This document shows positions 98 through 17,985 of a DNA stretch of 64,000 nucleotides, piece after piece. The notes under the pieces were generated by a model, which was not told where the DNA came from, ran no database searches, and saw only the letters and a list, made by a program, of their open reading frames with translations. Location of the stretch: the IMG/VR virus record IMGVR_UViG_3300017917_000952, positions 1 through 64,000 of that record; one strand, 5' to 3'. The stretch's first letter is position 1. The number at the start of each line of letters is the position of its first letter. Position numbers and translations under genes: made by a program.

Positions 98-1477
98 ATG
101 GCAAACTTAGGAAATTTAATCAAGCTCAATCGCAACCAATCGAAGGTCGCTATTATTGACGAAGATGCTCGCGTAACCTATAGACAATTGCATAATATGT
201 CTAACTATGCCGCATTTCATCTCAAATCAAAAGGTATTGCACCCGGTGACAGAGTAGCCATTAAAGGTGTTAATACCATAGGCTATGTAGCGGCATATTT
301 AGGAATTTTAAAACTAGGAGCCGTAGCGGTTCTCATAAATGTAAAACTTCCACAATCGCAGGTTGAGTTTATTTTAAAAGACAGCAATGTTAAATTTTTA
401 TGGGAAGATCCAAAAATCCCTAGCGATGTGTTTGTTGAATTTACTCCACACGAAGCTCAGGACAGTGACCCGGCTATTGTAATGTATACATCGGGTTCTA
501 CAAGCCAACCCAAAGGAGTCATTCTTCCGCATAGCCACAAATGGATTATTGAAAAGAAATCAAATTATCCGGCGGCTGTTCATAGGAGAGCGATTGTTGC
601 CGCACCATTATATCATATGAATGGCCTAAGCAATACCGAAACTACACTAAGCGGCCACGGTACTCTTATTCTTTTAAAAAGATTTGACCCGATACAATTC
701 TTAAAAAGAATAGCCTACCACCGAGTAAATTCTATTACATCTGTTCCTACGATGTTGGCATTGATACTTCAACATCAAGATGTAATGAAAAAATTAGATC
801 TAAAATGTGTTACACATATTGGAATGGCTTCTGCACCTGTTAGCAGACATTTATTTGAATCTCTAAAGGCTGCATTTCCAAAAGCAGTAATCAACAATGC
901 TTATGGAATAACTGAAGTTAGTCCGGGAATGTTTGGAAGGCATCCGACTCTACCCACGCCCGATATGAGTGTTGGATATCCAATACCTGGAATTGAATAT
1001 AGGCTAGTAGACGGAATTCTACAGGTAAAGAGTCCATCTATGTTCTTAAAATATAATAACCTAGCAACAAAAAACATAACCGAAGATGGGTTTTTTATCA
1101 CAAATGATTTGTTCAAAATAGACGAAAACGGGTTTTACTTTTTCTTAGGCCGCGCCGATGACATGTTTGTTAGCGGCGGGAATAATGTATACCCCCGTCA
1201 ATTAGAGTCAGTATTAGAAGAACACCCGTTAGTCAAACAAGCGGCAGTCATTGGCCTAGAAGATGATATTAAGGGGATGAAACCGTACGCATTTGTGGTA
1301 TCTACTGCCGGCGAGGACGAACTAAAAAGACATGTATTAGAATCGTTGCCGCCGAGTCATTGTCCTAGAAAAATTTGGTCGGTTATGACGATGCCACTAA
1401 CCAGCGTAAACAAAATAGATAAAAATGCACTAAAGAATCAAGCAAAAGAGTTATTAAATGTTGTTCAACAGAATTGA
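98..1477 (+). CDS. AMP-binding acyl-CoA synthetase (adenylate-forming enzyme)
   Basis: YTSGSTSQPKG AMP-binding loop, YGITE, FITNDL, GRADD and C-terminal NKIDK lysine. Start placed at ATG 98, 5 nt after TTAAATA (track start 83). Confidence 0.9.
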   Translation: MANLGNLIKLNRNQSKVAIIDEDARVTYRQLHNMSNYAAFHLKSKGIAPGDRVAIKGVNTIGYVAAYLGILKLGAVAVLINVKLPQSQVEFILKDSNVKFLWEDPKIPSDVFVEFTPHEAQDSDPAIVMYTSGSTSQPKGVILPHSHKWIIEKKSNYPAAVHRRAIVAAPLYHMNGLSNTETTLSGHGTLILLKRFDPIQFLKRIAYHRVNSITSVPTMLALILQHQDVMKKLDLKCVTHIGMASAPVSRHLFESLKAAFPKAVINNAYGITEVSPGMFGRHPTLPTPDMSVGYPIPGIEYRLVDGILQVKSPSMFLKYNNLATKNITEDGFFITNDLFKIDENGFYFFLGRADDMFVSGGNNVYPRQLESVLEEHPLVKQAAVIGLEDDIKGMKPYAFVVSTAGEDELKRHVLESLPPSHCPRKIWSVMTMPLTSVNKIDKNALKNQAKELLNVVQQN

Positions 1478-2195
1478 GAATCTTAACGGTCAGGTAGCCG
1501 TAATTACCGGAGCCAACGGCGGTGTCGGGTTTGCTGTTGCAGAAAGACTAGCAAAGTCGGGTGCTCAGATTATCGGAATAGTTAGACGCAACGTAGAAGA
1601 AATGCAGGCAAGGTTAGATCAACTAGGGCCAGGTCATAGAGCCCTATTAGCGGATGTAACTAGCAGCGAACAATTAATATCGGCGGCGGCCCAGATCACA
1701 CAGTGCGATATACTTATTAATAATGCCGGCGCTTCTACTCCTATCGATCATAAAAATTTAACCTCGCTGACGGACGAAATTTTTGAAAACGTAGTAAAGG
1801 TTAATCTAAACGGCGTATTTTACACTACTAAGGCATTTTTACCTCTCCTACGAAAGAGTCAGAATGCACTGGTTGTTAATATAAGTTCGGCTAGTAGTAT
1901 ACGAACAGGCGGCAGCAATGTTGCCTATGCAGCCGCAAAAGCAGGGGTTGACTCATTGACTAGAAATTTAGCAAAGGCCCTTGCTCCAATTAGAGTAGTA
2001 AGTTTAAATCCTACACTTATAAAAACTAATTTTACACAAATGCCAGACTCTTATTACCATAACGCAGGTCTAGGAACTCCATTAAAACGAGTAGTTACTG
2101 TAGAAGATGTTGCATCAACTGTAGAGGCACTGGCAACTACAGTGAGATTTGTAACCGGCAACAACATTGTCATTGACGGAGGAAGAACACTATGA
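1458..2195 (+). CDS. Short-chain dehydrogenase/reductase (SDR)
   Basis: TGANGGVG Rossmann motif, NNAG, catalytic S and YAAAK, IDGG C-terminus. Confidence 0.92.
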   Translation: MLFNRIENLNGQVAVITGANGGVGFAVAERLAKSGAQIIGIVRRNVEEMQARLDQLGPGHRALLADVTSSEQLISAAAQITQCDILINNAGASTPIDHKNLTSLTDEIFENVVKVNLNGVFYTTKAFLPLLRKSQNALVVNISSASSIRTGGSNVAYAAAKAGVDSLTRNLAKALAPIRVVSLNPTLIKTNFTQMPDSYYHNAGLGTPLKRVVTVEDVASTVEALATTVRFVTGNNIVIDGGRTL

Positions 2196-3064
2196 CTACA
2201 ATTATAACCTGTGCTATAACAGGAGCGGTCACTAGTAGAGATCAAACTCCGTATCTTCCAGTGACTCCTGAAGAGATTGCAATTAGCGCACTTGAAGCAG
2301 CAGAAGCCGGCGCGGCAGTAGCGCACATACATGTTCGAGATCCCGAAACAGGAAAACCGAGTATCAATGTAGAGTACTACAGAGATACAGTTGATAGAAT
2401 TCGTAAACAAAATAAAGACCTTTTGATTAACTTAACGACTGGGCCTGGCGCATTTTATTTGCCAAGTTTTGGTGTTAACCTAGCACAAGGTGCTCCAGGA
2501 ACTTTACTACTAGGCGCCGCAAAACGTGTAGAGCATATTCAGTTAATTAAACCCGATATCTGTAGTTTAGATTTTAATACCATGCATCAGGCCGGAGACG
2601 GTATCAGAATAAACCATAAACGTGTTACTAGAGAAATGCTAAGGTTAGTTCAAGAAGCAGGTACGAAACCAGAGTTAGAGATCTTTGATAGCGGAGACCT
2701 TCGCATAGCACAAGAGTTTGTTGCAGAAGGATTGGTAAAAGGTAAACCATTTTGGCAATTTGCCATGGGCGTTAAATATGGCTGGGGCGCAAGCACCAAT
2801 GCACTACAATATGCTTACAGAGAACTAACACCGGGATCGTTGTGGAGTGCCTTTGGCATAGGAAAAGAACAGATGCCATTTGTTGCACAGACAATGTTGT
2901 TAGGTGGGCATGTTAGGGTAGGCATGGAAGATAATATCTACACCAGTAAGGGAGTGTTAGCAAAAACTAATGCAGAATTGGTTAGTATGGCCGTTGACAT
3001 TATCAGACTATTAGGAGGCAAGGTTGCATCCTATCAAGAAGCAAGGGAAATTTTATTACAATGA
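2192..3064 (+). CDS. Beta-keto acid cleavage enzyme (BKACE/Kce, DUF849)
   Basis: ITCAITGA start, PVTPEEIA, AGAAVAHIHVRD zinc motif, PELEIFD, GGHVRVGMEDN. Confidence 0.9.
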   Translation: MTTIITCAITGAVTSRDQTPYLPVTPEEIAISALEAAEAGAAVAHIHVRDPETGKPSINVEYYRDTVDRIRKQNKDLLINLTTGPGAFYLPSFGVNLAQGAPGTLLLGAAKRVEHIQLIKPDICSLDFNTMHQAGDGIRINHKRVTREMLRLVQEAGTKPELEIFDSGDLRIAQEFVAEGLVKGKPFWQFAMGVKYGWGASTNALQYAYRELTPGSLWSAFGIGKEQMPFVAQTMLLGGHVRVGMEDNIYTSKGVLAKTNAELVSMAVDIIRLLGGKVASYQEAREILLQ

Positions 3065-3843
3065 CACAAGAAAGATTAGATACTAGACAGTCCTATTTCT
3101 ACAGGGATCATACCGGGATACGAAGAAGATACGGAATATACATGCCTGCTATTGATAGATTCCTGCATGTGTCAGAACAAGATTTATGGATGAGTCTCGA
3201 AACTGCTGAGATTCTAAGTTCCAAAGTACAAACTATGCTATATGTGCTGCCCCCTGGTTACATAAAAGTTCCCGAGTATACCGAACTTATTAATAATCAA
3301 AACTGTCTCAATTGGGGCATCTATGACAAGTCAAAATTAAAGATAGGTTCCGGCAGTGCGCTAGGTGCCAGACAGACTCCTATTATAGGTATGCTTTATC
3401 CTGATGATCGATTAGAAGAACATCAGTCTCTTCCAGAAGACTTTATCGAAGATAGTTCTATACTAATAGGTTTGAAAGACTATGCAGATTATGTATATCG
3501 AAGAGTTTTAGGAATTAGCATTGCAGTGAATTTTTATAATCCGTATTTCTCAAAGAAATTTATAGAAAAATATATCGACAATGATTGGGTAGAAAATAAA
3601 GAAAATTCAGCAGACCCTTCCTTTTCAAAAGGTATTGAATTTGAAATTAAGAAAATACTTTACCAGTGCAACTCTAAGGAAGAAGCCGAAGAAGCAATTA
3701 CTAATTTCTGGCTCGAAAATTATAGAAACGTAGGATTTATTATGGTAGGATATTATAAGGTAATCGGAGAAAGAATCCCAGAAAAACTAAGACCATACGC
3801 TTCAAATATTCACTATCTTAACCATTCAGTGTGGGTCATATAA
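3061..3843 (+). CDS. Hypothetical protein, coupled to the downstream PP-loop ATPase gene
   Basis: 260-aa ORF overlapping both neighbours; no motif recognised. Confidence 0.7.
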   Translation: MTQERLDTRQSYFYRDHTGIRRRYGIYMPAIDRFLHVSEQDLWMSLETAEILSSKVQTMLYVLPPGYIKVPEYTELINNQNCLNWGIYDKSKLKIGSGSALGARQTPIIGMLYPDDRLEEHQSLPEDFIEDSSILIGLKDYADYVYRRVLGISIAVNFYNPYFSKKFIEKYIDNDWVENKENSADPSFSKGIEFEIKKILYQCNSKEEAEEAITNFWLENYRNVGFIMVGYYKVIGERIPEKLRPYASNIHYLNHSVWVI

Positions 3844-5102
3844 TGCTTAATATAAACGATACACTTTATTTTTCAAGCCATGTTGTGAATTGGTATACTA
3901 GAGATACTTGGGATAAGGTATACAAAAACGTCCCTCCAGACGGTCAATGGTACCTAAAGGTGTACGAAAAGGTCTTACCTAATCGATTAATAACAAGGAA
4001 TGGGGAGTGGACTACTCCGTGGCCCCAGGAACTAATTCCTAAATTTAAGATGCCCGAGTACGATCCTTACTTTAGTAAATCGTTCGAACAGGTGACAGAT
4101 GAAAACGCTCTACGGATAAGGGATAGAATTCTCCAAGGAGAAAAGTTTGCCGTCATGTATTCGGGGGGTATTGATAGTACACTAGTTCTTTCATCGTTGA
4201 TTAAAAATCTTAGCAGTGAAGAATTAGAAAATGTAACTGTAGTTTGTAGTGGAGAAAGCATTGCCGAGAACCCTGTGTTCTATAGTAAGTTCATTCACGA
4301 AAAAATGAAAACCCTAGATTCTAAACGACACAAATATGATGACCTGATTAATCTAGGTTTGACTCCTATTATTTCAGATGAAGGAGATTGTATTTTTGGA
4401 ACACTTATCGGGCTCAATATGTACAACAGTTTTGATGCCTTAGTTGATCACGTATCGGGTCCCGTAAAAGAAAATCTAAGGCTTCTAAAAGATAAAATTA
4501 GCGATCCCAGTGTTCATTACAGTACATTTAAAGACCTAATTATTAAATTTTTGGATTTACCGCATTCACCGACATTTGGTAGAATTCTGTACGACAAATA
4601 TGATCATAATATAAGAACTGCAACAGTTCCTGTTCATAGTCTCCATGATTTTTTCTGGTGGTTAATTTTCAACGTTAAATATTACAATTGTTCCGTTAGG
4701 GGTGCAATATATATCAACGATACTATAGATATCAACACAGCCGTTCACAGAATCCATAATTGGTTTAATGATGAAGATTACCAACGATGGAGTATGGCAA
4801 ACAATAACAATGGAACAAAAATTAAAAAAAGTATCCTCAGTTATAAAACGGCGGCTAAAGAATATATCTACTCCGTTGATAACAATATTTGGTACAGAAC
4901 CTTTAAGACAAAATTAGAGTCCCTGTGGAATATAAGTAACTTGCAAAATGTACAGAATATTCCGATGGAAAAAAGGCCTGTAGCAAGGATAGCAGTTAAA
5001 AAAGAAAACTGGGAATTGGTGCATCTTACTGACCCGGGGGTGGTTGAGTATTTTACTCATCATGCATCAAATTATAAAATAGATTGGACAGACATCAAAT
5101 GA
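3831..5102 (+). CDS. PP-loop ATPase (asparagine synthase C-domain / adenine nucleotide alpha-hydrolase-like)
   Basis: MYSGGIDST PP-loop and SDEGDCIFG; no N-terminal glutaminase Cys. Confidence 0.7.
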   Translation: MGHIMLNINDTLYFSSHVVNWYTRDTWDKVYKNVPPDGQWYLKVYEKVLPNRLITRNGEWTTPWPQELIPKFKMPEYDPYFSKSFEQVTDENALRIRDRILQGEKFAVMYSGGIDSTLVLSSLIKNLSSEELENVTVVCSGESIAENPVFYSKFIHEKMKTLDSKRHKYDDLINLGLTPIISDEGDCIFGTLIGLNMYNSFDALVDHVSGPVKENLRLLKDKISDPSVHYSTFKDLIIKFLDLPHSPTFGRILYDKYDHNIRTATVPVHSLHDFFWWLIFNVKYYNCSVRGAIYINDTIDINTAVHRIHNWFNDEDYQRWSMANNNNGTKIKKSILSYKTAAKEYIYSVDNNIWYRTFKTKLESLWNISNLQNVQNIPMEKRPVARIAVKKENWELVHLTDPGVVEYFTHHASNYKIDWTDIK

Positions 5103-6004
5103 AAAAATTTTTAGCAACCTTATTATTAGCAACTACAGCATTTGTGGCACATGCTAAAGAAAATATTACAATTTTCTATGCATGGGGTCCAGGTGACTCT
5201 GTAGCAAACTATCATCGCACTATCGCTGCTGAAGCAAACAAAATTCAAGACAAATACAATTTTATCTTTGATACCAAGCCAGGCGCAGGTGGTGCAATCG
5301 CATCTAACCACGTACTTAATACTCCTAACAGTGTATTGGCACATAGCACAGCATTTTTTGTGCGTCCTGTAGTGTTCCCTAACGAAAGTTATGATTTAAC
5401 AAAATACAAAGAACAATATGTTCACTGCATGGCCCCAATGGCTGTGACTAGTACAAAGTATAAAACTGTAAAAGATGTACCTGCCAACGCTAGTGTAGGT
5501 ATTAGCGGCCTAGGTGTTACTACACACTTAGCAGCACTAGAACTAAAGAAACGTTATCCGGATTTAAATATCGTTCCTTTTAAATCTACCAACGATAGTA
5601 TGTTAAGTATGGTAAGCGGTCAAACTGATCTACATATTGGATTTATCAGCGAAGCAGAACAATGGAGTAAAGAAAACTCTAACAGTGATCGTAAGGTAAA
5701 TGTTTTAGGTATTACTGGATCAAAAGTTGTTAATGGTTACCAACCGTTGGTTCGTCAAGGCTTCGACGCTAGTTTTGCCGACATGAATGTTGGACATCAT
5801 CTCCTAGTACCAACAACAGTCAGCGAAGAAAAGCGCAAAGAGTTTCACGCCATTTTTGCTCGTGCAGCCCAGGCTCCTAGCGTTCGTGCTGCCTATGCAG
5901 TTGACTACTGCGAACCACAGGCTGTTACCTATGACGGTTTAGACAAGTTCTTCTTGTTCCATACAAACTATTGGAAGAAGTTAGCATCTGCGGTTAAACT
6001 ATGA
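5084..6004 (+). CDS. Bug/TctC-like tripartite tricarboxylate transporter substrate-binding protein
   Basis: Signal peptide (MKKFLATLLLATTAFVAHA, likely start about 5099), KPGAGGAIA, GVTTHL, VPFKS. Confidence 0.8.
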   Translation: MDRHQMKKFLATLLLATTAFVAHAKENITIFYAWGPGDSVANYHRTIAAEANKIQDKYNFIFDTKPGAGGAIASNHVLNTPNSVLAHSTAFFVRPVVFPNESYDLTKYKEQYVHCMAPMAVTSTKYKTVKDVPANASVGISGLGVTTHLAALELKKRYPDLNIVPFKSTNDSMLSMVSGQTDLHIGFISEAEQWSKENSNSDRKVNVLGITGSKVVNGYQPLVRQGFDASFADMNVGHHLLVPTTVSEEKRKEFHAIFARAAQAPSVRAAYAVDYCEPQAVTYDGLDKFFLFHTNYWKKLASAVKL

Positions 6005-6894: not shown

Positions 6895-6931
6895 CTAAAT
6901 ATATGAGCATGAAAGGTTCATGCTCATTTTT
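6895..6931 (+). terminator. Terminator hairpin directly downstream of a late-promoter-like CTAAATA
   Basis: ATGAGCATGAA-AGG-TTCATGCTCAT (6903-6927) plus T run; CTAAATA at 6895-6901. Confidence 0.75.
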
Positions 6932-6956
6932 AACGTTATAAAATGGAGCCTAAACA

Positions 6957-7904: not shown

Positions 7905-7921
7905 TCTGTACTTAATCAAGT

Positions 7922-7942
7922 AAAGGGCCATATGGCCCTTTT
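7922..7942 (+). terminator. Terminator / perfect 20-bp palindrome
   Basis: AAAGGGCCAT|ATGGCCCTTT just after the dctP stop. Confidence 0.8.
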
Positions 7943-7957
7943 CTTACGAGTATACCC

Positions 7958-9570: not shown

Positions 9571-9609
9571 ATCAATATTTAATAACATTCTAACATAAGG
9601 AAAAAATAG

Positions 9610-11859: not shown

Positions 11860-11862
11860 ATT

Positions 11863-13293
11863 ATGCAGATTGTAATTTTAACCGGCGGAACTGATAACCG
11901 AAGATTTCTAAGGTACTTAGGTCCTTATCAAATAGCATGGTGGATGCGTGAACATGGATATTCTGTTCAGGTACTAGATTTTTTATTTTTTCTTCCTAAG
12001 GTGGAGAGAATAAATCTCCTAAGAAAATTTATAACAAAAGAAACAAAAGTAGTTTCAGTTGCCCCCTTTGCATACTTGGACTGGCATCACGACAGTGCTC
12101 TGGCTCCTATTATAAGTTTATTCCAAGACATAAAATACGAATTTCCTTGGGTCAAAATATCTGTAGGCGGGCAGTTTGCTACTAATTTTTTAAAGAAAAA
12201 AGTTTATACAAGACTAAAGTATAAGGTTGATGCAGTATTCCAAGGACCAGGAGAACATTCTTATCTAGACTATTGTAACTACATTTTTGGAAAGTCAGAT
12301 AAACACCCGGCATTCAAACTTATAGATGACCATAAAGTATTCGAATCCTCAGTAGAGTATGATGTACAAAACTGTAGAATGAGATTTTCTACTCAAGATT
12401 TTATTCTACCCGGAGAAGCATTACCAATCGAATTAAGTCGTGGATGTATTTTCAAATGTGCATTCTGTCAGTATCCTAACTTAGGCAAAGACAAAGACGA
12501 CTTCAACAGGAAGATTGAGAATATCCGAGATACCATGATTCATAATTATGAAAATTTCGGGACCACAGAATATTACATAGCAGACGATACAATTAACTCA
12601 CATAGGCAACGGACTAAAGATCTGCACGAAATGTCTAAAACATTACCTTTCAAATTAAATTACATAGGGTATGTAAGATTAGACCTGTTAGACATTTGGC
12701 CCGAGCAGCAAGAGATATTGCCAGAGTCGGGACTGGTTAGTTGCCACTTTGGAATAGAATCACTAGATCCTTACTCTTGCAAACAGATAGGCAAAGGTTG
12801 GGGAGCGAAGAATCACAAAATATGGATTCCTAAGATCGCAGAAATGTGGAAAGATACTGTGTCAATAAGATGTTCATTAATTGCAGGCCTTGGGAAAGAA
12901 ACAGAAAAAGACTGGAATGAAACAATGGAGTGGTTTAAAACTACCGGTGTAAAAGATTGGTTCTATAACCTACTGGTCCTAAGGAAAGAAATTGACCTAA
13001 GTCTTTTTGAAAAGAATCCCGAAAAGTACGGTTACAAATTTGATAGCAAAGGTAATTGGTATACAGATACAATGACCTATTATAGAGCAAAGGAATGGCA
13101 AACACTTAACTACTATAGTAATCTGTCTTTAAGATATGCTACCACATGGGATTACATAGGACTAAGAAACTTAGGATTCAGCAAAGAACAACTTAATACT
13201 GAAAAGTTTGGGTCCATGATTAAAGCCGTTGCAGCAAGAACTCAAGCCCGAGACTTTGCTAAACGTTACTACCAACTGGCAATGAGTTATTAA
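11863..13293 (+). CDS. B12-binding radical SAM protein
   Basis: SRGCIFKCAFC CxxxCxxC motif, N-terminal cobalamin-binding-like domain (ISVGG), DDT, GIES, LIAGL. Confidence 0.85.
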   Translation: MQIVILTGGTDNRRFLRYLGPYQIAWWMREHGYSVQVLDFLFFLPKVERINLLRKFITKETKVVSVAPFAYLDWHHDSALAPIISLFQDIKYEFPWVKISVGGQFATNFLKKKVYTRLKYKVDAVFQGPGEHSYLDYCNYIFGKSDKHPAFKLIDDHKVFESSVEYDVQNCRMRFSTQDFILPGEALPIELSRGCIFKCAFCQYPNLGKDKDDFNRKIENIRDTMIHNYENFGTTEYYIADDTINSHRQRTKDLHEMSKTLPFKLNYIGYVRLDLLDIWPEQQEILPESGLVSCHFGIESLDPYSCKQIGKGWGAKNHKIWIPKIAEMWKDTVSIRCSLIAGLGKETEKDWNETMEWFKTTGVKDWFYNLLVLRKEIDLSLFEKNPEKYGYKFDSKGNWYTDTMTYYRAKEWQTLNYYSNLSLRYATTWDYIGLRNLGFSKEQLNTEKFGSMIKAVAARTQARDFAKRYYQLAMSY

Positions 13294-14210
13294 GGCAGTT
13301 TGCCGTCTTTTAGATATTTAGAAAAGCACAATCTATTAGATCCTGTTCCTCGATTGTACTCTGTAAACTTATCTGTAGAAGTTGCGAAAAATACACACTT
13401 AGTCGGATTCACTCCTAACTGATCACTAAACATTTCCTGAGTATTTCTATAGGTATTATAGTTGTAATCGGGACTGTATTTTTCAATTAGTTTTTCACCA
13501 ACAGCGGCTCCTAAACGATTTACATATTTGTTTTTGTTGTAAACAAACAAAGGATCATCATTATCTAGTCGTGTTAACCTCATTCCTATTCTAAGATGTT
13601 GTACAGGAAAGTTTTTGCTTAGACTAAAAACTATTTCTTCAATACATTGATAATTAAAATCAAATTTTACATTACCGCATACACCAAAATAGCAACAGTC
13701 TACTAATACAGGAACATTTAGTTTTTCACAGACAGATAAAATATCTTCCATTAAGGGATTTTCTGCTCCGTTATCGGCGAAAGGTAAACTAAAAATTACA
13801 ACATCGTCTGCACGGATAGCATCGTCTTCGATAACTGCAACTCTATCAAAGTATGCTTTACCTGATGCAATGTGATACATGTACTCGCCTTTGAAATAAC
13901 GAAGGCGACGTTCTTTATGTTTTAGATAAAATTTATCAAATGCTTCCGTTGTTCCGTTACTGAAAGCAAAGGCATTGAAATTTTCTAGTCCTGCAATTTG
14001 ATTGTTCTTTGTTGATAAGATCCATTCTTTATATTTTCTGCAGAACCGATCGTGAACTTCAACATCATTTAAGCAACCTTCGGCAACAACAGTATTAATA
14101 ATACCTGCAACTTCTTGTTCTAGTTCTTCGTTTTTTACACAATGTACGCTACCGAAGGGTAGGCTTTTTAATTTTAACAGTGCATTCCACTGTTCTTCTT
14201 TTTGAGTCAT
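13290..14210 (-). CDS. PLP-dependent fold-type I enzyme (aminotransferase/decarboxylase-like)
   Basis: GTTEAFD, VLVDCCY (PLP Asp), FSLSKNF (Schiff-base Lys), LRIGMR. Confidence 0.65.
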   Translation of the reverse strand: MTQKEEQWNALLKLKSLPFGSVHCVKNEELEQEVAGIINTVVAEGCLNDVEVHDRFCRKYKEWILSTKNNQIAGLENFNAFAFSNGTTEAFDKFYLKHKERRLRYFKGEYMYHIASGKAYFDRVAVIEDDAIRADDVVIFSLPFADNGAENPLMEDILSVCEKLNVPVLVDCCYFGVCGNVKFDFNYQCIEEIVFSLSKNFPVQHLRIGMRLTRLDNDDPLFVYNKNKYVNRLGAAVGEKLIEKYSPDYNYNTYRNTQEMFSDQLGVNPTKCVFFATSTDKFTEYNRGTGSNRLCFSKYLKDGKLP

Positions 14211-15337
14211 TATTCGCTCACAAATATTTTCTTGGTAGGAATTAATCTATAACCTTTGTTCCACCACATTAGGTTAGGACGCAACTGCGACAGATGCTCT
14301 GCGGCCATATATTCGTATCTGTCTTTAAACTCTTTTAGTTCAGGGTACTGCCATAACCAGAAGTGTTTATCAGATCTATTAAGTCTAAGAGGTTTCTCTG
14401 CCTGGAATCTATCTGTCCAATTAGTATATAGAACATGGCGTAAAAACTTTTGTTGTTCTTTTTGTTTGAAGTAAAACATTTCAAGACTGTTCTTTACATC
14501 TCTTGTAAATGCTAATTCTGATAATTCTTTTTCTCTCTTGAATACTTTAATTGCTGCATTGGCCATTTCAAACGCAAGAATAGGAAATTTCGGTGTCCAG
14601 TAAAAATATTCCGTGCCGTAGATATTACCAGGATAAGGTGTTCCCATTGTAACAGCAGAGTCACAGAACCACATATAATTTTTATTGTCTTCGAAATAGG
14701 TCTTAGGTTTGTCAACACCGTATATCGATGCTACTTTCTTACCTTGCTCAGACAATTTAATTTCATTTGGACTCCATACTGCTAAAGAAGTAACTTCTAC
14801 ATCGTGCCAGTGATTAACTAGGCCAAATATTTCTTCTTGACCGATGGATGTTCTATCTTTAAACCAATCAACAATTTCAATTTTTATGTTAGGGTGTTTT
14901 TGAGCGACTTCTTCCAGGACCGGTTTGATAGCGTAGTCCCATTCACTCAAATAATTTACCGCGGTTTTTTCTTCTGTATTAGGTACGTAGATACCTCGGT
15001 CAATAACATCCGACGCCCATTTTACACAAATTTCATCTAGATGTATTCCGTTATCTAAAAATGAACGTAATACATTATAACTGTCAGCGCCGCCCGAGAA
15101 GTATAAAATAAGATAATCGTAACTGTCTCGCAACTGCTGAGCACGTTGTTTATATAGTTCATTGAGACTAAATTTACCAATCAATGATCTATCAAAATTT
15201 TGCCACACATCATCAAAAAATCTATACTGAACAGTGTTGTTTGTTTTAGTTGCATAGAGCAAAGCCTGATATTTGTTTATAAACTTTTGATCAGCGACTT
15301 CCCAATATCCTTGAGGGTAATTTTCTATAAATTGCAT
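14210..15337 (-). CDS. PP-loop ATPase (asparagine synthase-like)
   Basis: LYFSGGADS PP-loop, GVDKP, EYFYW; TATAAATA 8 nt upstream on the minus strand. Confidence 0.7.
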   Translation of the reverse strand: MQFIENYPQGYWEVADQKFINKYQALLYATKTNNTVQYRFFDDVWQNFDRSLIGKFSLNELYKQRAQQLRDSYDYLILYFSGGADSYNVLRSFLDNGIHLDEICVKWASDVIDRGIYVPNTEEKTAVNYLSEWDYAIKPVLEEVAQKHPNIKIEIVDWFKDRTSIGQEEIFGLVNHWHDVEVTSLAVWSPNEIKLSEQGKKVASIYGVDKPKTYFEDNKNYMWFCDSAVTMGTPYPGNIYGTEYFYWTPKFPILAFEMANAAIKVFKREKELSELAFTRDVKNSLEMFYFKQKEQQKFLRHVLYTNWTDRFQAEKPLRLNRSDKHFWLWQYPELKEFKDRYEYMAAEHLSQLRPNLMWWNKGYRLIPTKKIFVSE

Positions 15338-15397
15338 AGCAGTGATATTTATAGGCGGGTGTTTTGTAAAAGCATAAATATTGAAAAGGGGAACACC

Positions 15398-15769
15398 ATG
15401 CCATATATGATGTTAAAAGGAACATTTACACGACCAAACACAGATGTAGAATTTTTCGATGGGTCGGTTAATAGACCTGTCATGGAAGATATGCAGCAAA
15501 AGGGATTGATTATCGATCGCGGCAGTTATCTGTCAGAGGATCAATTGACCAAGACCCATTATTTCACTTCACAGATCGAAACGGCGTCAGATATTAATAT
15601 TGTTACCTCTGCTCTCAGAACTGATCCAAACTTCTATGAAATGCACATTGCATTTCAAGAGTACTGCGATCAACACGGAATTACCAGAGGACCGATTGTT
15701 ATTGAAGTTTACACTTCTGACTGGATTCTTATGAACACCATGAACTTTATGGTTGCTGATCTTTTCTAA
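15398..15769 (+). CDS. Hypothetical protein
   Basis: ATG 15398 with AAGGGG RBS and CATAAATA at 15373; the track start at 15200 overlaps the opposite-strand gene. Confidence 0.65.
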   Translation: MPYMMLKGTFTRPNTDVEFFDGSVNRPVMEDMQQKGLIIDRGSYLSEDQLTKTHYFTSQIETASDINIVTSALRTDPNFYEMHIAFQEYCDQHGITRGPIVIEVYTSDWILMNTMNFMVADLF

Positions 15770-16373: not shown

Positions 16374-16406
16374 GTCCGTAGTATTTTTCGAAGTATTTAG
16401 TACCAC

Positions 16407-16414
16407 TATAAATA
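16407..16414 (+). promoter_or_regulatory. T4-type late promoter TATAAATA
   Basis: Exact consensus, 7 nt before ATG 16422. Confidence 0.65.
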
Positions 16415-16421
16415 GCAGACT

Positions 16422-16529
16422 ATGAATATTTTTAAAAGAATCATTAACTGGTACAAATTAAGAAAGCAGCGCAAAGAACTAGAAAAACGCCTGGCCGAAC
16501 TTAGAAAACGAGATCCATTCATCTATTAA
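16422..16529 (+). CDS. 35-aa basic peptide upstream of the carbamoyltransferase (absent from the ORF track)
   Basis: MNIFKRIINWYKLRKQRKELEKRLAELRKRDPFIY; fills the gap between the promoter and ATG 16531. Confidence 0.7.
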   Translation: MNIFKRIINWYKLRKQRKELEKRLAELRKRDPFIY

Positions 16530-16530
16530 C

Positions 16531-17985
16531 ATGATACTAGGTATTAACGGTCAGAATCATGATGCAAGCATGGCCTTGGTAGATCAAGAATCTATCTTAT
16601 GGGCTGCACACGCAGAACGGTATTCTAGAACTAAAAACGATAAACTCCTTAATACTGATATGATTAAGGAAATGTACGAGTACGGTGCTCCAAAGGTTGC
16701 GGTATGGTTTGAAAAACCTTTCTCAAAGTCTATGAGAAAACTTTACAGCGGAGAACGACCCTGGTGGTGCAATCCTAAGGAAGAACTAAAGCGTGTCGGT
16801 CTAGGTCATCTAAGCCTAGAAAAAGTAGGACACCACGAAAGTCATGCAGCCGCAGGATTCTATACAAGTAAGTTTCAAGATGCGGCAATTCTTGTAGTAG
16901 ATGCAATAGGAGAATGGGACTCTGCCAGTATGTGGCACGGAACAGCCTACGGTCTTAATAAAATCTGGGATATGAAATATCCAGACAGCATGGGGTTATT
17001 CTACACAGCATTTACACAGTTCTTAGGACTGAAACCCAACGAAGAAGAATATATCTTAATGGGTATGGCTGCACTAGGCAAGCCTATAGTTGTAGAACAA
17101 ATTAAAAAAGATTTCTTTGATAGTTTTGGTCCACCGTTTATTAAATTAAAACACAATTTACATAGAGGTTGTCGTTGGTGGGAAGCACCTAAGGGCGTGA
17201 CTAATTTTGATATTGCAGCCAGTGTTCAATACATAATGGAAGAATATCTCTTAGATACCGTTGCTGCCCTAAGATCAAATGTAGCCAGTGATAATTTAGT
17301 ATTCATGGGCGGTGTTGCTCTTAACTGTGTTGCAAATAGTATCATTGCAAAACAAAAATATTTTAAAAATATTTGGGTAATGCCTAATCCTGGCGATGCA
17401 GGCAGTTCTATTGGTGCGGTTGCAGCGTTAGAAAGAAAGCACCTCGACTGGCGACATCCTTATCTAGGCACCTCTATTAATCGTGTATTAGATATAGAAG
17501 GCGTTGTTAAAGAACTTATGGCAGGTAATGTTGTTGCAGTCGCTAATGGTCGGGCAGAATTTGGGCCAAGGGCATTGGGTAATAGAAGTTTACTCTGCGA
17601 TCCTCGTGGCCCGGACGCTAAGGCCAGAATGAATAGGTTAAAGCGAAGGGAAGAATTTAGACCCTTTGCTCCTGCTATCCTAGAGGAACATGCACATTAT
17701 TATTTTGATATGGTTGTACCTACTAGTCCATACATGCAGTTTGTTATGCGGTGCAAGGATCCTAAGAATTTCCCGGGTATTTGCCACTACGACAATACCA
17801 GTAGGGTGCAGACAGTTAACCACGCAGATAATCCAAATTTTAGGGCTATTTTGGAATTATGGTACGAAAAAACCGGTTGTCCGATGCTTATGAATACTAG
17901 TCTAAATGTAAAAGGCGAGCCCTTGGTAAATAGTTTAAGCGATGCTGTACGTTGGGAAAAGTTAAATGGCGTAAAAGTATTTTGA
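16531..17985 (+). CDS. O-carbamoyltransferase (NodU/CmcH/TobZ family)
   Basis: HDAS, ERYSR, HHESHAAAGF, GGVALNC, GDAG, GRAEFGPRALGNRS, KRREEFRPFAP, LMNTSLN. Confidence 0.95.
   Translation: MILGINGQNHDASMALVDQESILWAAHAERYSRTKNDKLLNTDMIKEMYEYGAPKVAVWFEKPFSKSMRKLYSGERPWWCNPKEELKRVGLGHLSLEKVGHHESHAAAGFYTSKFQDAAILVVDAIGEWDSASMWHGTAYGLNKIWDMKYPDSMGLFYTAFTQFLGLKPNEEEYILMGMAALGKPIVVEQIKKDFFDSFGPPFIKLKHNLHRGCRWWEAPKGVTNFDIAASVQYIMEEYLLDTVAALRSNVASDNLVFMGGVALNCVANSIIAKQKYFKNIWVMPNPGDAGSSIGAVAALERKHLDWRHPYLGTSINRVLDIEGVVKELMAGNVVAVANGRAEFGPRALGNRSLLCDPRGPDAKARMNRLKRREEFRPFAPAILEEHAHYYFDMVVPTSPYMQFVMRCKDPKNFPGICHYDNTSRVQTVNHADNPNFRAILELWYEKTGCPMLMNTSLNVKGEPLVNSLSDAVRWEKLNGVKVF

What the first reader, a model, noticed from the sequence alone, without database searches (positions are those of the whole stretch)
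98..17985. An 18-kb phage island that looks like a tailoring/biosynthetic pathway plus ligand-binding proteins
Seen: one block encodes an acyl-CoA ligase, SDR, BKACE, two PP-loop ATPases, three Bug/TctC and one DctP binding proteins, four 2OG-Fe(II)-type oxygenases, a B12 radical SAM enzyme, a PLP enzyme, a possible GNAT and an O-carbamoyltransferase. The only ordinary phage gene among them is dCMP deaminase. Known: this enzyme mix (adenylation, hydroxylation, B12 methylation, carbamoylation) is typical of natural-product or hypermodification clusters, not of simple host-supporting metabolic genes. Inference: the phage makes or decorates a molecule (a small metabolite, modified bases, or virion protein/glycan), and the binding proteins capture its precursor or product. 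Late-type promoters on several of these genes point to a late substrate.
Basis: partly seen in the sequence, partly recalled or inferred. Interest (0 to 1): 0.85.

Follow-up and report, generated by a model that had tools for sequence, protein, structure and literature searches.

The report
Mosaic metabolic island in freshwater phage
The genes are real, but they are not one pathway: they form a patchwork of small gene cassettes in the variable region next to the tail genes of an uncultured freshwater T4-type phage, and the unit that recurs most is an unstudied, apparently phage-only ATP-using enzyme paired with a protein that binds organic acids.

Summary
Nearly all the gene calls hold: ligase, SDR, BKACE, two PP-loop ATPases, three Bug/TctC proteins, one DctP, four 2OG-type oxygenases, a radical SAM enzyme, dCMP deaminase and a carbamoyltransferase. 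The PLP enzyme is weakly supported. The GNAT is not supported.

The block is not bounded at 17985. Metabolic genes continue to about 38 kb, where tail genes begin.

Across about 115 related phage loci the block splits into cassettes that assort separately:
- ligase-SDR-BKACE;
- an orphan protein plus a PP-loop ATPase, paired in all 28 related loci and often followed by DctP or Bug;
- Bug3 plus a 2OG oxygenase, a PLP-like protein plus the second PP-loop ATPase, and an oxygenase plus the radical SAM enzyme;
- the carbamoyltransferase-to-FolE run.

PP-loop genes sit next to binding-protein genes 56 times against 23 expected. Phage DctP proteins never show an N-terminal hydrophobic (signal-like) segment (0/18); Bug proteins almost always do (69/71). 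Neither PP-loop family matched any of 50,697 GenBank phage records; the second also has almost no cellular homologues.

An ATAAATA motif upstream of tail-fibre genes also precedes four island genes, consistent with late expression.

My best reading is cassettes that capture and activate organic acids. The product is unknown.

The parts
14..35 (+). Terminator-like hairpin followed by a T run. It marks the left edge of the first transcription unit.
83..1477 (+). ANL-family acyl/aryl-CoA (or acyl-carrier) ligase. First gene of the ligase-SDR-BKACE cassette.
   Evidence: Pfam AMP-binding E 3e-59 plus AMP-binding_C. All NCBIfam hits are below cut-off. Co-occurs with SDR and BKACE in L018 and L025.
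1458..2195 (+). Short-chain dehydrogenase/reductase.
   Evidence: Pfam adh_short_C2 E 1e-42
2192..3064 (+). [quoted passage not shown] Substrate unknown.
   Evidence: Pfam BKACE E 1.7e-94. The Kce equivalog scores 238 bits against a cut-off of 382. No hit in GenBank phages.
3061..3843 (+). u260: orphan protein, the invariable upstream partner of PP423.
   Evidence: Present next to PP423 in all 28 related loci. No Pfam or PDB homology even with a 17-sequence profile.
3831..5102 (+). PP423: PP-loop ATP pyrophosphatase resembling the synthetase domain of asparagine synthetase, without a glutaminase domain. Its likely start is the ATG at 3843.
   Evidence: SGGIDS motif. AF2 model pLDDT 82. Foldseek PDB matches are weak: TsnB9, ASNS, carbapenam and beta-lactam synthetases, LarE. 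BFVD matches reach TM 0.65-0.71. No GenBank phage hit.
5084..6004 (+). Bug1: TTT-type (Bug/TctC) solute-binding homologue with a signal peptide. Its likely start is the ATG at 5099, overlapping the PP423 stop codon (ATGA).
6001..6894 (+). Bug2: TctC-family solute-binding homologue with a signal peptide.
   Evidence: Pfam TctC E 2e-6
6957..7904 (+). DctP-type (TRAP) solute-binding homologue without a signal peptide, so presumably cytoplasmic. It keeps the SGG[YF]R motif.
   Evidence: Pfam DctP E 5e-40. No upstream extension is possible. 0 of 18 phage homologues have a hydrophobic N-terminus. The motif is invariant in all phage members.
7958..7965 (+). TATAAATA late-promoter-like motif, 4 nt upstream of the next gene.
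7970..8569 (+). Small AspH-like 2OG/Fe(II) oxygenase.
   Evidence: Pfam PF05118 E 6e-8; HTD...H motif
8550..9098 (+). dCMP deaminase.
   Evidence: Pfam E 1.3e-22
9031..9588 (-). Small AspH-like 2OG/Fe(II) oxygenase.
   Evidence: Pfam PF05118 E 3.8e-5. Travels with the PP375 cassette in L035 and L037.
9610..10536 (+). Bug3: TctC-family solute-binding protein with a signal peptide. Its 3' end overlaps the start of the next gene.
   Evidence: Pfam TctC E 1e-21. PDB Bug/TTT proteins score up to 69 bits. Paired with cupin254 in L034, L035, L037 and the contig of P0308.
10526..11290 (+). cupin254: 2OG/Fe(II) oxygenase of an unannotated family with a fixed length of about 254 aa.
   Evidence: Invariant H160, D162, H216 and R226. 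AF2 pLDDT 94.7. Foldseek matches AspH, prolyl and proline hydroxylases, prob 1.0.
11287..11859 (+). cupin190: probable 2OG oxygenase, paired with the radical SAM gene.
   Evidence: HVD...PH...PR pattern aligned to cupin254. Adjacent to the radical SAM homologue in L031-33 and L037.
11863..13293 (+). Radical SAM enzyme, probably of the B12-binding class.
   Evidence: Pfam Radical_SAM. NCBIfam PhpK-family E 1e-21 and other B12 radical SAM families, all below cut-off. CxxxCxxC motif.
13290..14210 (-). PLP306: short aminotransferase-like protein, second gene of the PP375 operon.
   Evidence: PF00155 on 4 of the 120 listed homologues. Profile match to aminotransferase 3if2 aligns the SLSK motifs, E 0.06. 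23% identical to the Mosig 'putative aminotransferase'.
14210..15337 (-). PP375: PP-loop ATPase of a large, almost phage-only family.
   Evidence: SGGADS motif. 908 metagenomic homologues, none annotated. 218 viral loci. 2 hits in 185,579 species genomes, both on contigs under 2 kb. No GenBank phage hit.
15346..15353 (-). TATAAATA late-promoter-like motif, 8 nt upstream of PP375.
15374..15769 (+). ATAAATA motif (15374-15380) and a conserved 123-aa gene (15398-15769) of unknown function.
   Evidence: A 125-aa homologue sits at the same place in L035. No Pfam hit.
   Evidence: No hit in Pfam, NCBIfam or PHROGs. 44-45% homologue in L035, L036 and L045.
16407..16529 (+). TATAAATA motif (16407-16414) and a conserved 35-aa basic ORF (16422-16529) that ends 1 nt before the carbamoyltransferase start.
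   Evidence: Both the motif and the ORF are conserved in L035/L036.
16531..17985 (+). NodU/CmcH-type carbamoyltransferase.
   Evidence: Pfam Carbam_trans_C E 4e-54 and Carbam_trans_N E 9e-45. 43% identical to Ralstonia phage RsoM2USA. Common in cyano- and pelagiphages.
18035..18769 (+). HExxH protein, a possible SprT-like metallopeptidase.
   Evidence: HEIMH motif; weak PHROG 10499 hit; 72% homologue in L035
18801..20145 (+). u75, a truncated UDP-glucose/GDP-mannose dehydrogenase-like protein (19025-19879) and an acyl carrier protein (19876-20145).
   Evidence: Pfam UDPG_MGDP_dh_N and central domains; PP-binding E 3e-7. Same gene order in L035 and L045.
20191..21953 (+). GTP cyclohydrolase I (FolE; 20191-20937) and an IMPDH/GMP-reductase-family protein (20934-21953).
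   Evidence: FolE is 87% identical in L035, L045 and L085.

Best explanation
The block is the left part of a variable, metabolism-rich island of at least 37 kb. It lies directly upstream of the tail and tail-fibre module of an uncultured freshwater T4-superfamily myophage (contig of 206,751 bp). It is of the same kind as the 'host recognition cluster' and hyperplastic regions described in marine pelagi- and cyanomyophages.

It is not one pathway. It is a patchwork of cassettes that are gained and lost separately:
- A: ligase-SDR-BKACE.
- B: u260-PP423 followed by solute-binding homologues (Bug1, Bug2, DctP).
- C: two small oxygenases around dCMP deaminase.
- D: Bug3 coupled to a 2OG oxygenase, a second oxygenase with a radical SAM enzyme, and the late operon PP375-PLP306.
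- E: small late genes, carbamoyltransferase, HExxH protein, dehydrogenase-like protein, ACP and FolE.

The unit that recurs across more than 100 phage loci is an asparagine-synthetase-like PP-loop ATPase encoded next to a TTT- or TRAP-type solute-binding homologue. That much is shown.

The proposed mechanism is inferred. Both binding-protein families recognise carboxylate ligands. PP-loop enzymes of this type adenylate a carboxyl or carbonyl oxygen so that an amine can attack it. The ANL ligase and BKACE also act on carboxylic acids. I therefore propose that the island encodes capture-and-activate cassettes for organic acids:
1. Exported Bug proteins hand ligands to a TctAB-type membrane carrier, either the host's or a phage copy.
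2. The signal-less DctP homologue holds a carboxylate in the cytoplasm.
3. PP-loop enzymes convert the carboxyl group, at the cost of ATP, into an amide or a ligation product.
4. Oxygenases, the radical SAM enzyme and the aminotransferase-like protein tailor the carbon skeleton.
5. SDR and BKACE turn a beta-hydroxy acid into an acyl-CoA plus acetoacetate.

The ligands and the final use are unknown.
For: Identity and setting:
- The window is positions 1-64000 of IMGVR_UViG_3300017917_000952.
- The clamp loader is 59% identical to that of the Pseudomonas phage PA5oct group.
- Tail and tail-fibre genes start at 38.7 kb. Metabolic genes fill 20-38 kb.

Mosaic structure:
- The tblastn and ORF-cluster maps of about 115 loci show it.
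- u260+PP423 are together in 28 of 28 related loci, with otherwise variable flanks.
- The ligase-SDR-BKACE trio recurs in L018 and L025.
- Cassette D genes recur in four different arrangements, including a 353-kb contig.
- L035, L036 and L045 keep cassettes C, D and E in order but lack A, B and the radical SAM pair.

PP-loop and binding-protein link:
- 56 adjacencies observed against 23.1 +/- 4.3 in within-locus shuffles; 0 of 2000 shuffles reach 56.
- 53 of 92 binding-protein genes have a PP-loop gene as immediate neighbour.
- 51 of the 56 pairs are co-directional.
- The same adjacency appears in an independent contig, L125.
- In the window, stop and start codons overlap or nearly touch through SDR-BKACE-u260-PP423-Bug1-Bug2.

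Chemistry:
- PP-loop motif and fold.
- The PP375 family has no invariant cysteine, which argues against sulfur transfer.
- The SGG[YF]R motif is invariant in the phage DctP homologues.
- 69 of 71 Bug proteins have a hydrophobic N-terminal segment.
- Another phage contig from the same metagenome carries TctA beside a distant cupin254 homologue and an Amidohydro_2 gene.
- Relatives carry TauD, Rieske and Amidohydro_2 genes.
Against: - No ligand, substrate or product is known for any protein here. The carboxylate theme is inferred from family-level knowledge.
- Adjacency counts come from related, non-independent loci, and most were chosen because they carry a PP-loop gene. The within-locus shuffles control for composition but not for shared ancestry.
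- Tight gene packing is normal in phages, so overlapping stops and starts prove little.
- Late-promoter-like motifs on PP375-PLP306 and the carbamoyltransferase fit a product needed late better than nutrient scavenging does.
- PP-loop families with almost no cellular relatives are unlike typical host-derived auxiliary genes.
- Exported Bug proteins and cytoplasmic ATP-dependent enzymes work in different compartments, so any link between them must be indirect.
- The carbamoyltransferase, ACP, dehydrogenase-like protein and FolE are not explained by this model.
Confidence: 0.5

Rival explanations
1. First reader's reading. The whole 18-kb block is one biosynthetic or tailoring pathway that makes or decorates a single molecule, and the binding proteins capture its precursor or product.
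For: The enzyme classes together resemble tailoring sets of natural-product clusters: adenylation, hydroxylation, radical SAM, PLP and carbamoylation. In this phage the genes are contiguous and tightly packed.
Against: The block splits into cassettes that occur separately in related phages. The closest relative lacks the whole left third and the radical SAM pair. The carbamoyltransferase is alone in RsoM2USA. No scaffold-forming enzyme appears in the Pfam or NCBIfam scans of 83-22000.
Confidence: 0.08
2. Surface decoration. The late cassettes D and E, with the sugar-nucleotide genes further right, modify a cell-envelope or virion-surface component. Examples would be amidating, carbamoylating, hydroxylating or acylating a glycan, lipid or tail-fibre protein. 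The purpose would be to block superinfection or tune adsorption, as proposed for the host recognition cluster of pelagimyophages.
For: - The island abuts the tail-fibre module.
- Late-promoter-like motifs shared with tail-fibre genes precede PP375-PLP306, the 123-aa gene and the carbamoyltransferase.
- Sugar and acyl-carrier genes are present: a dehydrogenase-like protein, ACP, a GDP-mannose-dehydratase/epimerase-family protein and an FkbM methyltransferase.
- Dehydrogenase-like genes sit next to PP-loop genes in L102, L105 and L115.
- Asparagine-synthetase-like enzymes are known to amidate uronic acids and peptidoglycan (my own knowledge).
- Phage Mosig has a comparable island beside its tail fibres, and PMC7029224 proposes host-surface modification.
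- The nearest secreted DctP relative lies in a Dlt-like carrier-protein/MBOAT cluster of a bacterium.
Against: No glycosyltransferase, MBOAT or flippase was found among the window genes scanned. The cassettes assort independently. The Bug/TctC and BKACE genes are not explained. Timing is inferred from a motif, not measured.
Confidence: 0.22
3. Nucleotide or DNA hypermodification. The oxygenases, PP-loop enzymes, radical SAM enzyme, PLP enzyme and carbamoyltransferase build a modified base.
For: dCMP deaminase, FolE and a GMP-reductase-like gene lie within or beside the block. A PTPS/QueD-family gene lies at 32259-32765. PP-loop enzymes include QueC and TilS (my own knowledge). T4-type phages often modify their DNA.
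Against: No dNMP hydroxymethylase, DpdA/TGT, nucleotide kinase or glycosyltransferase was found among the window genes scanned. QueE and QueC were not detected. Neither PP-loop family shows a conserved cluster of cysteines of the QueC zinc-site type: PP375 has no invariant cysteine and PP423 has only one. Solute-binding proteins and BKACE have no place in such a pathway. 142 kb of the contig were not seen.
Confidence: 0.05
4. No functional coupling at all. The region is a dumping ground where unrelated accessory genes accumulate, and the PP-loop/binding-protein adjacency only reflects tandem expansion of two abundant families in one hotspot.
For: PP-PP and SBP-SBP tandem adjacencies are also enriched: 32 against 17.6, and 19 against 4.4. 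The flanks of every cassette are highly variable. Hyperplastic regions are a known feature of T4-like genomes (PMC3037559, PMC7029224).
Against: Within-locus shuffles already control for local abundance, and PP-SBP still exceeds all 2000 shuffles. PP-OX and PP-B12 adjacencies are not enriched, so the effect is specific. The pairing holds for two PP-loop families that share only the motif region, and for both binding-protein families.
Confidence: 0.15

Closest known systems
Host recognition cluster and hyperplastic regions of aquatic T4-like myophages (pelagimyophages and cyanomyophages; PMC7029224, PMC3037559). Concrete example: Pelagibacter phage Mosig EXVC030M, record positions about 52-67 kb.
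   Same: A large non-syntenic island beside the tail-fibre genes. It holds radical SAM cassettes, AspH-like oxygenases, a carbamoyltransferase, aminotransferases, an acetyltransferase-like gene, and TauD and fatty-acid-desaturase genes in relatives. Function is unknown there too.
   Different: This phage is not a close relative of the Kyanoviridae. Its clamp loader is nearest to the PA5oct group. The island here is dominated by PP-loop ATPases and TTT/TRAP binding-protein homologues and carries BKACE. None of these appears in the annotated Mosig stretch I examined. PP423, PP375 and BKACE matched no GenBank phage record, and DctP gave only weak hits of 21-24% identity to short unannotated or bacterial-looking records. 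Its position relative to VrlC and gp14 was not tested.
Phage-encoded periplasmic solute-binding auxiliary genes, such as cyanophage PstS (PMC3037559). tctA has been reported in marine viromes (PMC6359870).
   Same: Bug1, Bug2 and Bug3 keep signal peptides and the TctC fold. They could boost uptake through a TctAB carrier. A related phage contig carries TctA.
   Different: There are three paralogues per genome, tied to PP-loop and oxygenase genes. The DctP-type member has lost its signal peptide in all 18 phage copies, which a transport role does not explain.
Synthetase domain of the asparagine synthetase B family: AsnB, beta-lactam synthetase, carbapenam synthetase, TsnB9. More broadly, N-type ATP pyrophosphatases such as NadE, LarE and TilS.
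   Same: The SGGxDS PP-loop and a similar nucleotide-binding core. Some viral homologues are auto-named asparagine synthase.
   Different: There is no glutaminase domain. Only the motif region aligns by sequence (E 0.04). Structural matches to PDB are weak (TM about 0.3). The C-terminal two thirds are novel. PP375 has only 2 doubtful hits in a pattern-seeded scan of 185,579 species genomes, a scan that finds mainly closer relatives.
BKACE-centred catabolic operons: lysine fermentation Kce, dehydrocarnitine cleavage, 3-oxoadipate and 3,5-dioxohexanoate enzymes.
   Same: A full-length BKACE domain encoded beside a dehydrogenase that could produce the beta-keto acid, and a CoA ligase. The trio is co-inherited.
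   Different: It scores below every NCBIfam equivalog cut-off, so the substrate is unassigned. This family has no match in GenBank phages.

Membership tests
Single natural-product biosynthetic gene cluster | A scaffold-forming core enzyme (PKS, NRPS, terpene synthase and so on) or a precursor peptide | tested here: not met
   Pfam and NCBIfam scans of all ORFs of 60 aa or more in 83-22000 show only an ANL ligase and a free-standing ACP. The 35-aa ORF at 16422 is an untested candidate peptide.
Single natural-product biosynthetic gene cluster | The genes are inherited together as one block | tested here: not met
   The cassettes occur separately in related phage loci.
Phage DNA hypermodification cluster | A base-entry enzyme: dNMP hydroxymethylase, DpdA/TGT, hydroxymethyl-base kinase or a transferase acting on DNA | tested here: not met
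   None was found among the window genes scanned with Pfam, NCBIfam or PHROGs. The other 142 kb of the contig were not examined.
Phage DNA hypermodification cluster | A complete 7-deazaguanine set (FolE, QueD, QueE, QueC) | tested here: inconclusive
   FolE and a PTPS/QueD-family gene are present. QueE and QueC were not detected in the window.
TTT (Bug/TctC) periplasmic solute-binding protein | TctC domain | tested here: met
   Bug3 E 1e-21 and Bug2 E 2e-6. Bug1 is joined to the family only by iterative search.
TTT (Bug/TctC) periplasmic solute-binding protein | N-terminal signal peptide | tested here: met
   All three window proteins have one. 69 of 71 phage homologues do, by a hydropathy criterion.
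TTT (Bug/TctC) periplasmic solute-binding protein | Cognate TctA/TctB membrane subunits | not testable with these tools
   None was found in the window genes scanned, and the host is unknown. TctA is present in another phage contig of the same metagenome.
TRAP DctP solute-binding protein | DctP domain | tested here: met
   Pfam E 5e-40, NCBIfam TRAP_S1 108 bits against a cut-off of 50. PDB TRAP binding proteins score up to 70 bits.
TRAP DctP solute-binding protein | Export to the periplasm (signal peptide) | tested here: not met
   No upstream extension is possible in 10 of 10 loci. 0 of 18 have a hydrophobic N-terminus. The nearest relatives with a signal peptide are about 44% identical.
TRAP DctP solute-binding protein | The conserved arginine that clamps the ligand's carboxylate | tested here: inconclusive
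   SGG[YF]R is invariant in all 19 phage proteins. I equate it with the family's ligand-binding Arg from memory, not from a structural alignment.
Asparagine synthetase B family / N-type ATP pyrophosphatase | SGGxDS PP-loop and the nucleotide-binding fold | tested here: met
   Motifs. Profile to PDB hits fall on the motif region. Foldseek.
Asparagine synthetase B family / N-type ATP pyrophosphatase | N-terminal glutamine amidotransferase domain | tested here: not met
   Only about 95 residues (PP423) and about 75 residues (PP375) precede the PP-loop. No such domain appears in Pfam.
BKACE | Full-length BKACE domain above the curated threshold | tested here: met
   316.7 bits against a cut-off of 24.8, profile positions 2-272 of 274
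BKACE | Assignment to a characterised substrate subfamily | tested here: not met
   The best equivalog scores 238 bits against a cut-off of 382.
B12-dependent (class B) radical SAM methyltransferase | Radical SAM core with a CxxxCxxC motif | tested here: met
   Pfam E 1e-11; the CIFKCAFC motif
B12-dependent (class B) radical SAM methyltransferase | N-terminal cobalamin-binding domain | tested here: inconclusive
   The best NCBIfam hits are B12 radical SAM families and span residues 26-413, but score 77 bits against a cut-off of 600. Pfam B12-binding is only 'weak', and only on a homologue in L034.
NodU/CmcH carbamoyltransferase | Both Carbam_trans_N and Carbam_trans_C domains | tested here: met
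   154 and 183 bits. The N-terminal domain matches only profile positions 119-344.
Fold-type I PLP aminotransferase | Aminotransferase domain with the Schiff-base lysine | tested here: inconclusive
   The protein has no hit of its own. Four of the 120 listed homologues carry PF00155. The family profile aligns its SLSK motif with the matching SLSK of an aminotransferase at E 0.06. K199 is invariant. At 306 aa it is short for the fold.
GNAT acetyltransferase (15747-16406) | GNAT domain or the acetyl-CoA binding motif | tested here: not met
   No hit in Pfam, NCBIfam or PHROGs. I see no R/Q-x-x-G-x-G/A motif in the sequence.
Host-recognition-cluster-type hypervariable island of aquatic T4-like myophages | Lies beside the tail-fibre module and is non-syntenic among relatives | tested here: met
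   Tail genes run from 38.7 to 50.5 kb. Flanks and content vary.
Host-recognition-cluster-type hypervariable island of aquatic T4-like myophages | Located between VrlC and gp14 | not tested
   The 2009-aa tail protein at 38702-44731 was not compared with VrlC.

The most novel reading that the evidence does not exclude
Aquatic, mainly freshwater, large phages carry a widespread and essentially phage-only two-part system. Asparagine-synthetase-like PP-loop ATPases, in several deeply diverged families, work together with solute-binding-fold proteins. One of these is a TRAP DctP lineage that has moved into the cytoplasm. In this reading the binding protein is not a transport receptor. It is a substrate holder or sponge that presents a specific host organic acid, or an acid-bearing signal or cofactor, to the ATPase for ATP-driven amidation or ligation. 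That would be a new way for a phage to rewire or disarm host metabolism.
Probability: 0.2. Interest if true: 0.8.

Novelty: new variant of a known kind. Interest (0 to 1): 0.55.

Why it matters
Variable islands beside the tail fibres of aquatic T4-like phages are abundant in nature and almost wholly unexplained. This one gives concrete, testable units in place of a vague 'biosynthetic island'.

- An invariant two-gene pair, u260-PP423.
- A PP-loop ATPase family with at least 908 metagenomic members and almost no cellular relatives.
- A solute-binding lineage that has lost export in every phage copy.
- A statistically supported link between the PP-loop enzymes and the binding proteins.

If the capture-and-activate idea is right, phages of freshwater heterotrophs manipulate organic-acid metabolism, the main carbon economy of such bacteria, with their own enzymes. 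If the surface-decoration rival is right, the same genes bear on host range and superinfection exclusion.

Either way, the ligands of the DctP and Bug homologues and the substrates of the PP-loop enzymes are tractable biochemical questions.

Tried and rejected
- Nucleotide search of 1-18000 against GenBank phages found no match.
- Single-sequence PDB searches of four unannotated proteins gave nothing.
- A profile of the PP423 family against PDB matched only the PP-loop motif region.
- u260: a 17-sequence profile against PDB and a per-member Pfam scan gave only noise.
- I asked whether PP423 and PP375 are close paralogues, and whether u260 and PLP306 are related. BLASTP and hhalign show only the PP-loop segment in common. 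The BFVD fold matches suggest a shared overall fold at long range.
- The sigma-70-type promoter scan found no more sites than shuffled sequence does (62 against 61.8), so it is uninformative.
- Exact TATAAATA is not over-represented in the window (4 against 6.2 expected). The signal lies in its position relative to gene starts, not in its count.
- There are no tRNA genes in the window, so no host clue from that source.
- Literature searches for phage TctC, TRAP, BKACE or PP-loop islands found no description of this association.
- I considered lipid A or ornithine-lipid hydroxylation, because LpxO and OlsC belong to PF05118 and relatives carry fatty-acid desaturases. I found no acyltransferase or lipid-pathway gene to anchor it.
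- I considered carbapenem-like and aminoglycoside-like pathways on enzyme-class resemblance alone. I rejected them as unsupported, since no scaffold enzyme is present.
- I considered aromatic-acid catabolism, because relatives carry Rieske and Amidohydro_2 genes. Those genes are absent from this window.

Full report
**What the window is.** The window is the first 64 kb of a 206,751-bp viral contig, IMGVR_UViG_3300017917_000952. It has 39-40% G+C and almost all genes are on the + strand. PHROGs finds a T4-type clamp loader, baseplate and long-tail-fibre domains and a 2009-aa tail protein. The clamp loader is 59% identical to that of the Pseudomonas jumbo phage PA5oct group and 48% to Agrobacterium phage Atu_ph07. 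Nucleotide search against 50,697 GenBank phage records finds nothing. This is an uncultured large myophage of the T4 superfamily. The host is unknown, and there are no tRNA genes in the window.

**Checking the observation.**
- an ANL ligase, an SDR and a full-length BKACE;
- a DctP-family protein and two TctC-family proteins;
- two Asp_Arg_Hydrox-type oxygenases and a dCMP deaminase;
- a radical SAM enzyme whose best NCBIfam hits are B12-binding radical SAM families, all far below cut-off;
- a two-domain NodU/CmcH-type carbamoyltransferase.

The two PP-loop ATPases have no Pfam hit but carry SGGIDS and SGGADS motifs. I built a 16-sequence alignment of the 423-aa protein's family. The structure model has pLDDT 82. 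Its PDB matches are weak: TsnB9, asparagine synthetase, carbapenam and beta-lactam synthetases, LarE and NAD synthetase, with E about 2e-3 and TM about 0.3. Its matches to six 365-397-aa proteins of uncultured phages are strong (TM 0.65-0.71), and some of those are auto-named asparagine synthase.

The 254-aa protein has an invariant HxD...H...R pattern. Its pLDDT 94.7 model matches AspH and prolyl or proline hydroxylases. The 190-aa protein shares that pattern only weakly.

The 'PLP enzyme' is marginal. Four of the 120 listed homologues carry PF00155. A family profile aligns its SLSK motif with the matching SLSK of an aminotransferase at E 0.06. It is 23% identical to a 'putative aminotransferase' of Pelagibacter phage Mosig. 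The 'possible GNAT' has no support.

**Corrections to the picture.**
1. The DctP homologue has no signal peptide, and none can be added upstream.
2. The block does not end at 17985. The conserved run continues with an HExxH protein, a truncated UDP-glucose-dehydrogenase-like protein, an acyl carrier protein, FolE and a GMP-reductase-like protein.
3. Further right lie MazG-like, Bax1-I, ClpP, PTPS/QueD, Cupin_2, class II aldolase, FAD oxidoreductase, GDP-mannose-dehydratase/epimerase, FkbM methyltransferase and UvdE genes. Tail genes start at 38.7 kb.
4. Two small conserved genes were missed. One is a 123-aa gene at 15398-15769. The other is a 35-aa ORF at 16422-16529.
5. A strong terminator-like hairpin at 14-35 precedes the ligase gene.

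**Late promoters.** Exact TATAAATA is not over-represented: 4 sites against 6.2 expected. The core ATAAATA occurs 11 times. Ten of the 11 sites lie 4-30 nt upstream of a same-strand start codon, in a window that is about 97% coding. Three of them precede tail or tail-fibre genes (44743, 47540, 49576).

Four sites are in the island. They lie before the oxygenase at 7970, before PP375-PLP306, before the 123-aa gene, and before the 35-aa ORF and the carbamoyltransferase. The last motif and its ORF are conserved in a 70%-related phage.

This fits T4-type late promoters, which I know from the T4 literature. The timing is inferred, not measured. Several spacings of 4-9 nt would imply nearly leaderless mRNAs.

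**Is it one pathway?** I fetched related loci in four steps:
- 28 viral loci that encode a relative of the 423-aa PP-loop protein;
- 3 loci for the radical SAM enzyme;
- 77 loci for the 375-aa PP-loop family;
- several metagenomic contigs through homologues of PP375, PLP306 and cupin254.

Mapping the window's proteins onto them and clustering all ORFs shows a patchwork.
- The orphan u260 and PP423 are adjacent in all 28 loci, but their flanks differ from locus to locus.
- Ligase-SDR-BKACE recur together in L018 and L025.
- The 190-aa oxygenase and the radical SAM enzyme recur as a pair in L031-33 and L037.
- Bug3 and cupin254, whose reading frames overlap, recur as a pair in L034, L035, L037 and the contig of P0308.
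- That pair lies near PLP306, PP375 and an AspH185 homologue in four different arrangements, one of them on a 353-kb contig.

The closest relatives are L035, L036 and L045. Their PP375 is 70% identical, their carbamoyltransferase 77-78% and their FolE 87%. They keep the order from the first small oxygenase (AspH199) through FolE. At that position they lack ligase, SDR, BKACE, u260, PP423, Bug1, Bug2 and DctP, and they lack the radical SAM pair. The carbamoyltransferase's best cultured match, Ralstonia phage RsoM2USA, has no other island gene within 12 kb.

Cassettes of two to seven genes do hold together.

**What recurs.** PP-loop ATPase genes and solute-binding-protein genes are interleaved again and again. 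I classified 2,594 ORFs in 115 loci by iterative profile search and removed near-duplicate loci, which left 88.
- PP-loop/binding-protein adjacencies number 56, against 23.1 +/- 4.3 in within-locus shuffles. None of 2000 shuffles reaches 56.
- 53 of 92 binding-protein genes have a PP-loop gene as immediate neighbour.
- 51 of the 56 pairs are co-directional.
- PP-loop/oxygenase and PP-loop/radical-SAM adjacencies are not enriched. Oxygenase/radical-SAM adjacency is (6 against 1.4).

The loci are related and were mostly chosen through PP-loop genes, so the count is not a clean probability. The effect is nonetheless specific. It holds for two PP-loop families that share only the motif region. It also reappears in an independently found contig. 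At least two more PP-loop families occur in these islands.

**The binding proteins.**
- Of 71 distinct phage Bug-type proteins, 69 have a hydrophobic N-terminal segment. Of 18 DctP-type proteins, none has one.
- A full HMMER search of 1.84 billion representatives shows many signal-less relatives of 36-59% identity. Relatives with an N-terminal extension appear from about 44% identity.
- One of those, P0347, has a clear signal peptide. It sits in a bacterial cluster with an AMP-binding enzyme, a DltD-like protein, a 72-aa carrier protein and an MBOAT.
- The SGG[YF]R motif is invariant in all phage DctP-type proteins. From memory of the family I take it to be the carboxylate-clamping arginine.
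- A different 146-kb phage contig from the same metagenome encodes TctA, the large membrane subunit of the TTT carrier. It lies beside a distant cupin254 homologue and an Amidohydro_2 gene.

**How unusual it is.**
- PP423, PP375 and BKACE have no tblastn match in GenBank phages.
- DctP matches only short unannotated or bacterial-looking records, at 21-24% identity.
- PP375 has at least 908 metagenomic homologues, none annotated, and 218 viral loci.
- It has only two hits in one genome per 185,579 species. Both are on MAG contigs under 2 kb. That scan is seeded with short peptide patterns, so distant cellular homologues could be missed.
- Literature searches found no description of the association.

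The kind of island is known, however. T4-like cyanophages carry several small 2OG oxygenases and up to three carbamoyltransferases as sporadic genes (PMC3037559). Pelagimyophages have a 34-45 kb hypervariable 'host recognition cluster' beside the tail fibres, with radical SAM cassettes and transport genes, and AspH-like genes are core to that group (PMC7029224). Phage Mosig shows a carbamoyltransferase, three radical SAM genes, two aminotransferases (one a PLP306 homologue), two AspH-like genes, a fatty-acid desaturase, TauD, an acetyltransferase and a peroxiredoxin next to its tail fibres.

**Mechanism.** Three things are shown: the cassette structure, the PP-loop/binding-protein linkage, and the split between exported and non-exported binding proteins.

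The rest is inferred. TTT and TRAP binding proteins recognise carboxylates. PP-loop enzymes of the asparagine-synthetase type adenylate a carboxyl or carbonyl oxygen for attack by an amine. PP375 has no invariant cysteine, which argues against sulfur-transfer chemistry. The ANL ligase and BKACE also act on carboxylic acids.

I therefore favour organic-acid capture-and-activate cassettes. Exported Bug proteins would feed a TctAB carrier. A cytoplasmic DctP-type holder would keep the ligand. PP-loop enzymes would make amides or ligation products. Oxygenase, radical SAM and PLP tailoring would follow. The SDR and BKACE would convert a beta-hydroxy acid to acyl-CoA plus acetoacetate.

I give this 0.5 as a description of what the cassettes do. 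It leaves open what the product is for.

**Rivals.**
- The main rival (0.22) is that the late cassettes decorate an envelope or virion-surface component. This fits the late motifs, the tail-fibre neighbourhood, the sugar-nucleotide and ACP genes and the pelagimyophage proposal. No glycosyltransferase or MBOAT was found.
- A hotspot with no functional coupling gets 0.15.
- The single-pathway reading gets 0.08.
- DNA hypermodification gets 0.05. FolE, PTPS/QueD and dCMP deaminase are present, but there is no base-entry enzyme and no QueE or QueC in the window.

**Verdict.** The island is a new variant of a known kind of hypervariable phage island. The PP-loop/binding-protein cassettes and the cytoplasmic DctP lineage are the new and testable content. 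I score interest at 0.55.

Noticed in passing
window 16407-16529 (+); L035 and L036 about 8795-8925 (-): A conserved 35-aa basic ORF lies between a conserved TATAAATA motif and the carbamoyltransferase start. Its C-terminal two thirds are nearly identical between the window and L035 and end in DPFIY. It could be a regulatory leader, a small membrane-associated peptide or a modified peptide.
   Followed up: partly
window 6957-7904; 18 homologues in L004-L119: Every phage DctP-type (TRAP) binding-protein homologue lacks a signal peptide but keeps the SGG[YF]R motif. The nearest signal-bearing relative (P0347, 44% identical) lies in a bacterial Dlt-like cluster: AMP-binding enzyme, DltD-like protein, carrier protein and MBOAT (L122).
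   Followed up: partly
window 20191-20937 and 32259-32765: GTP cyclohydrolase I (FolE) and a PTPS/QueD-family gene lie 11 kb apart. No QueE, QueC or DpdA was detected in the window. This may mean pterin synthesis, or a partial 7-deazaguanine precursor route completed elsewhere in the genome or by the host.
   Followed up: no
window 32762-37958: A second run of metabolic genes lies just before the tail module: Cupin_2, class II aldolase, DAO-type FAD oxidoreductase, a GDP-mannose-dehydratase/epimerase-family protein, an FkbM methyltransferase and a UvdE UV endonuclease.
   Followed up: no
window 24657-25349 and 31292-31888: The phage encodes a Bax1-I/YccA-family membrane protein (E 3e-50) and a ClpP protease (E 2e-77). 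ClpP homologues (cluster c10) recur in related loci.
   Followed up: no
window 7959, 15352(-), 47526, 55013, 62346(-) and others: Several ATAAATA motifs end only 4-9 nt before the start codon, with no visible Shine-Dalgarno sequence. If these are T4-type late promoters, the late mRNAs would be leaderless or nearly so.
   Followed up: partly
L007, L009, L010, L034, L035 (cluster c17); L002, L015, L026, L027 (cluster c20): Two further PP-loop ATPase families of about 300 aa (SGGTDS and SSGLDS motifs) occur in the same islands. Fatty-acid desaturase genes occur there in up to three tandem copies, with TauD, Rieske, Amidohydro_2 and DUF2828 genes.
   Followed up: partly
L041 5528-6976: A 146-kb phage contig from the same metagenome encodes TctA, the large membrane subunit of the tripartite tricarboxylate carrier. 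It lies near a distant cupin254 homologue and an Amidohydro_2 gene.
   Followed up: no
L004, L013, L018, L024, L028, L125: A small (about 77-92 aa) predicted membrane protein often sits next to the phage DctP gene. It carries DUF2061 in L125, and I did not test whether that protein belongs to cluster c15.
   Followed up: no
window 19025-19879: The UDP-glucose/GDP-mannose dehydrogenase homologue has the NAD-binding and central domains but lacks the C-terminal UDP-binding domain (284 aa). The same short form is conserved at 78-79% identity in L035 and L045, so it is not a broken gene.
   Followed up: partly
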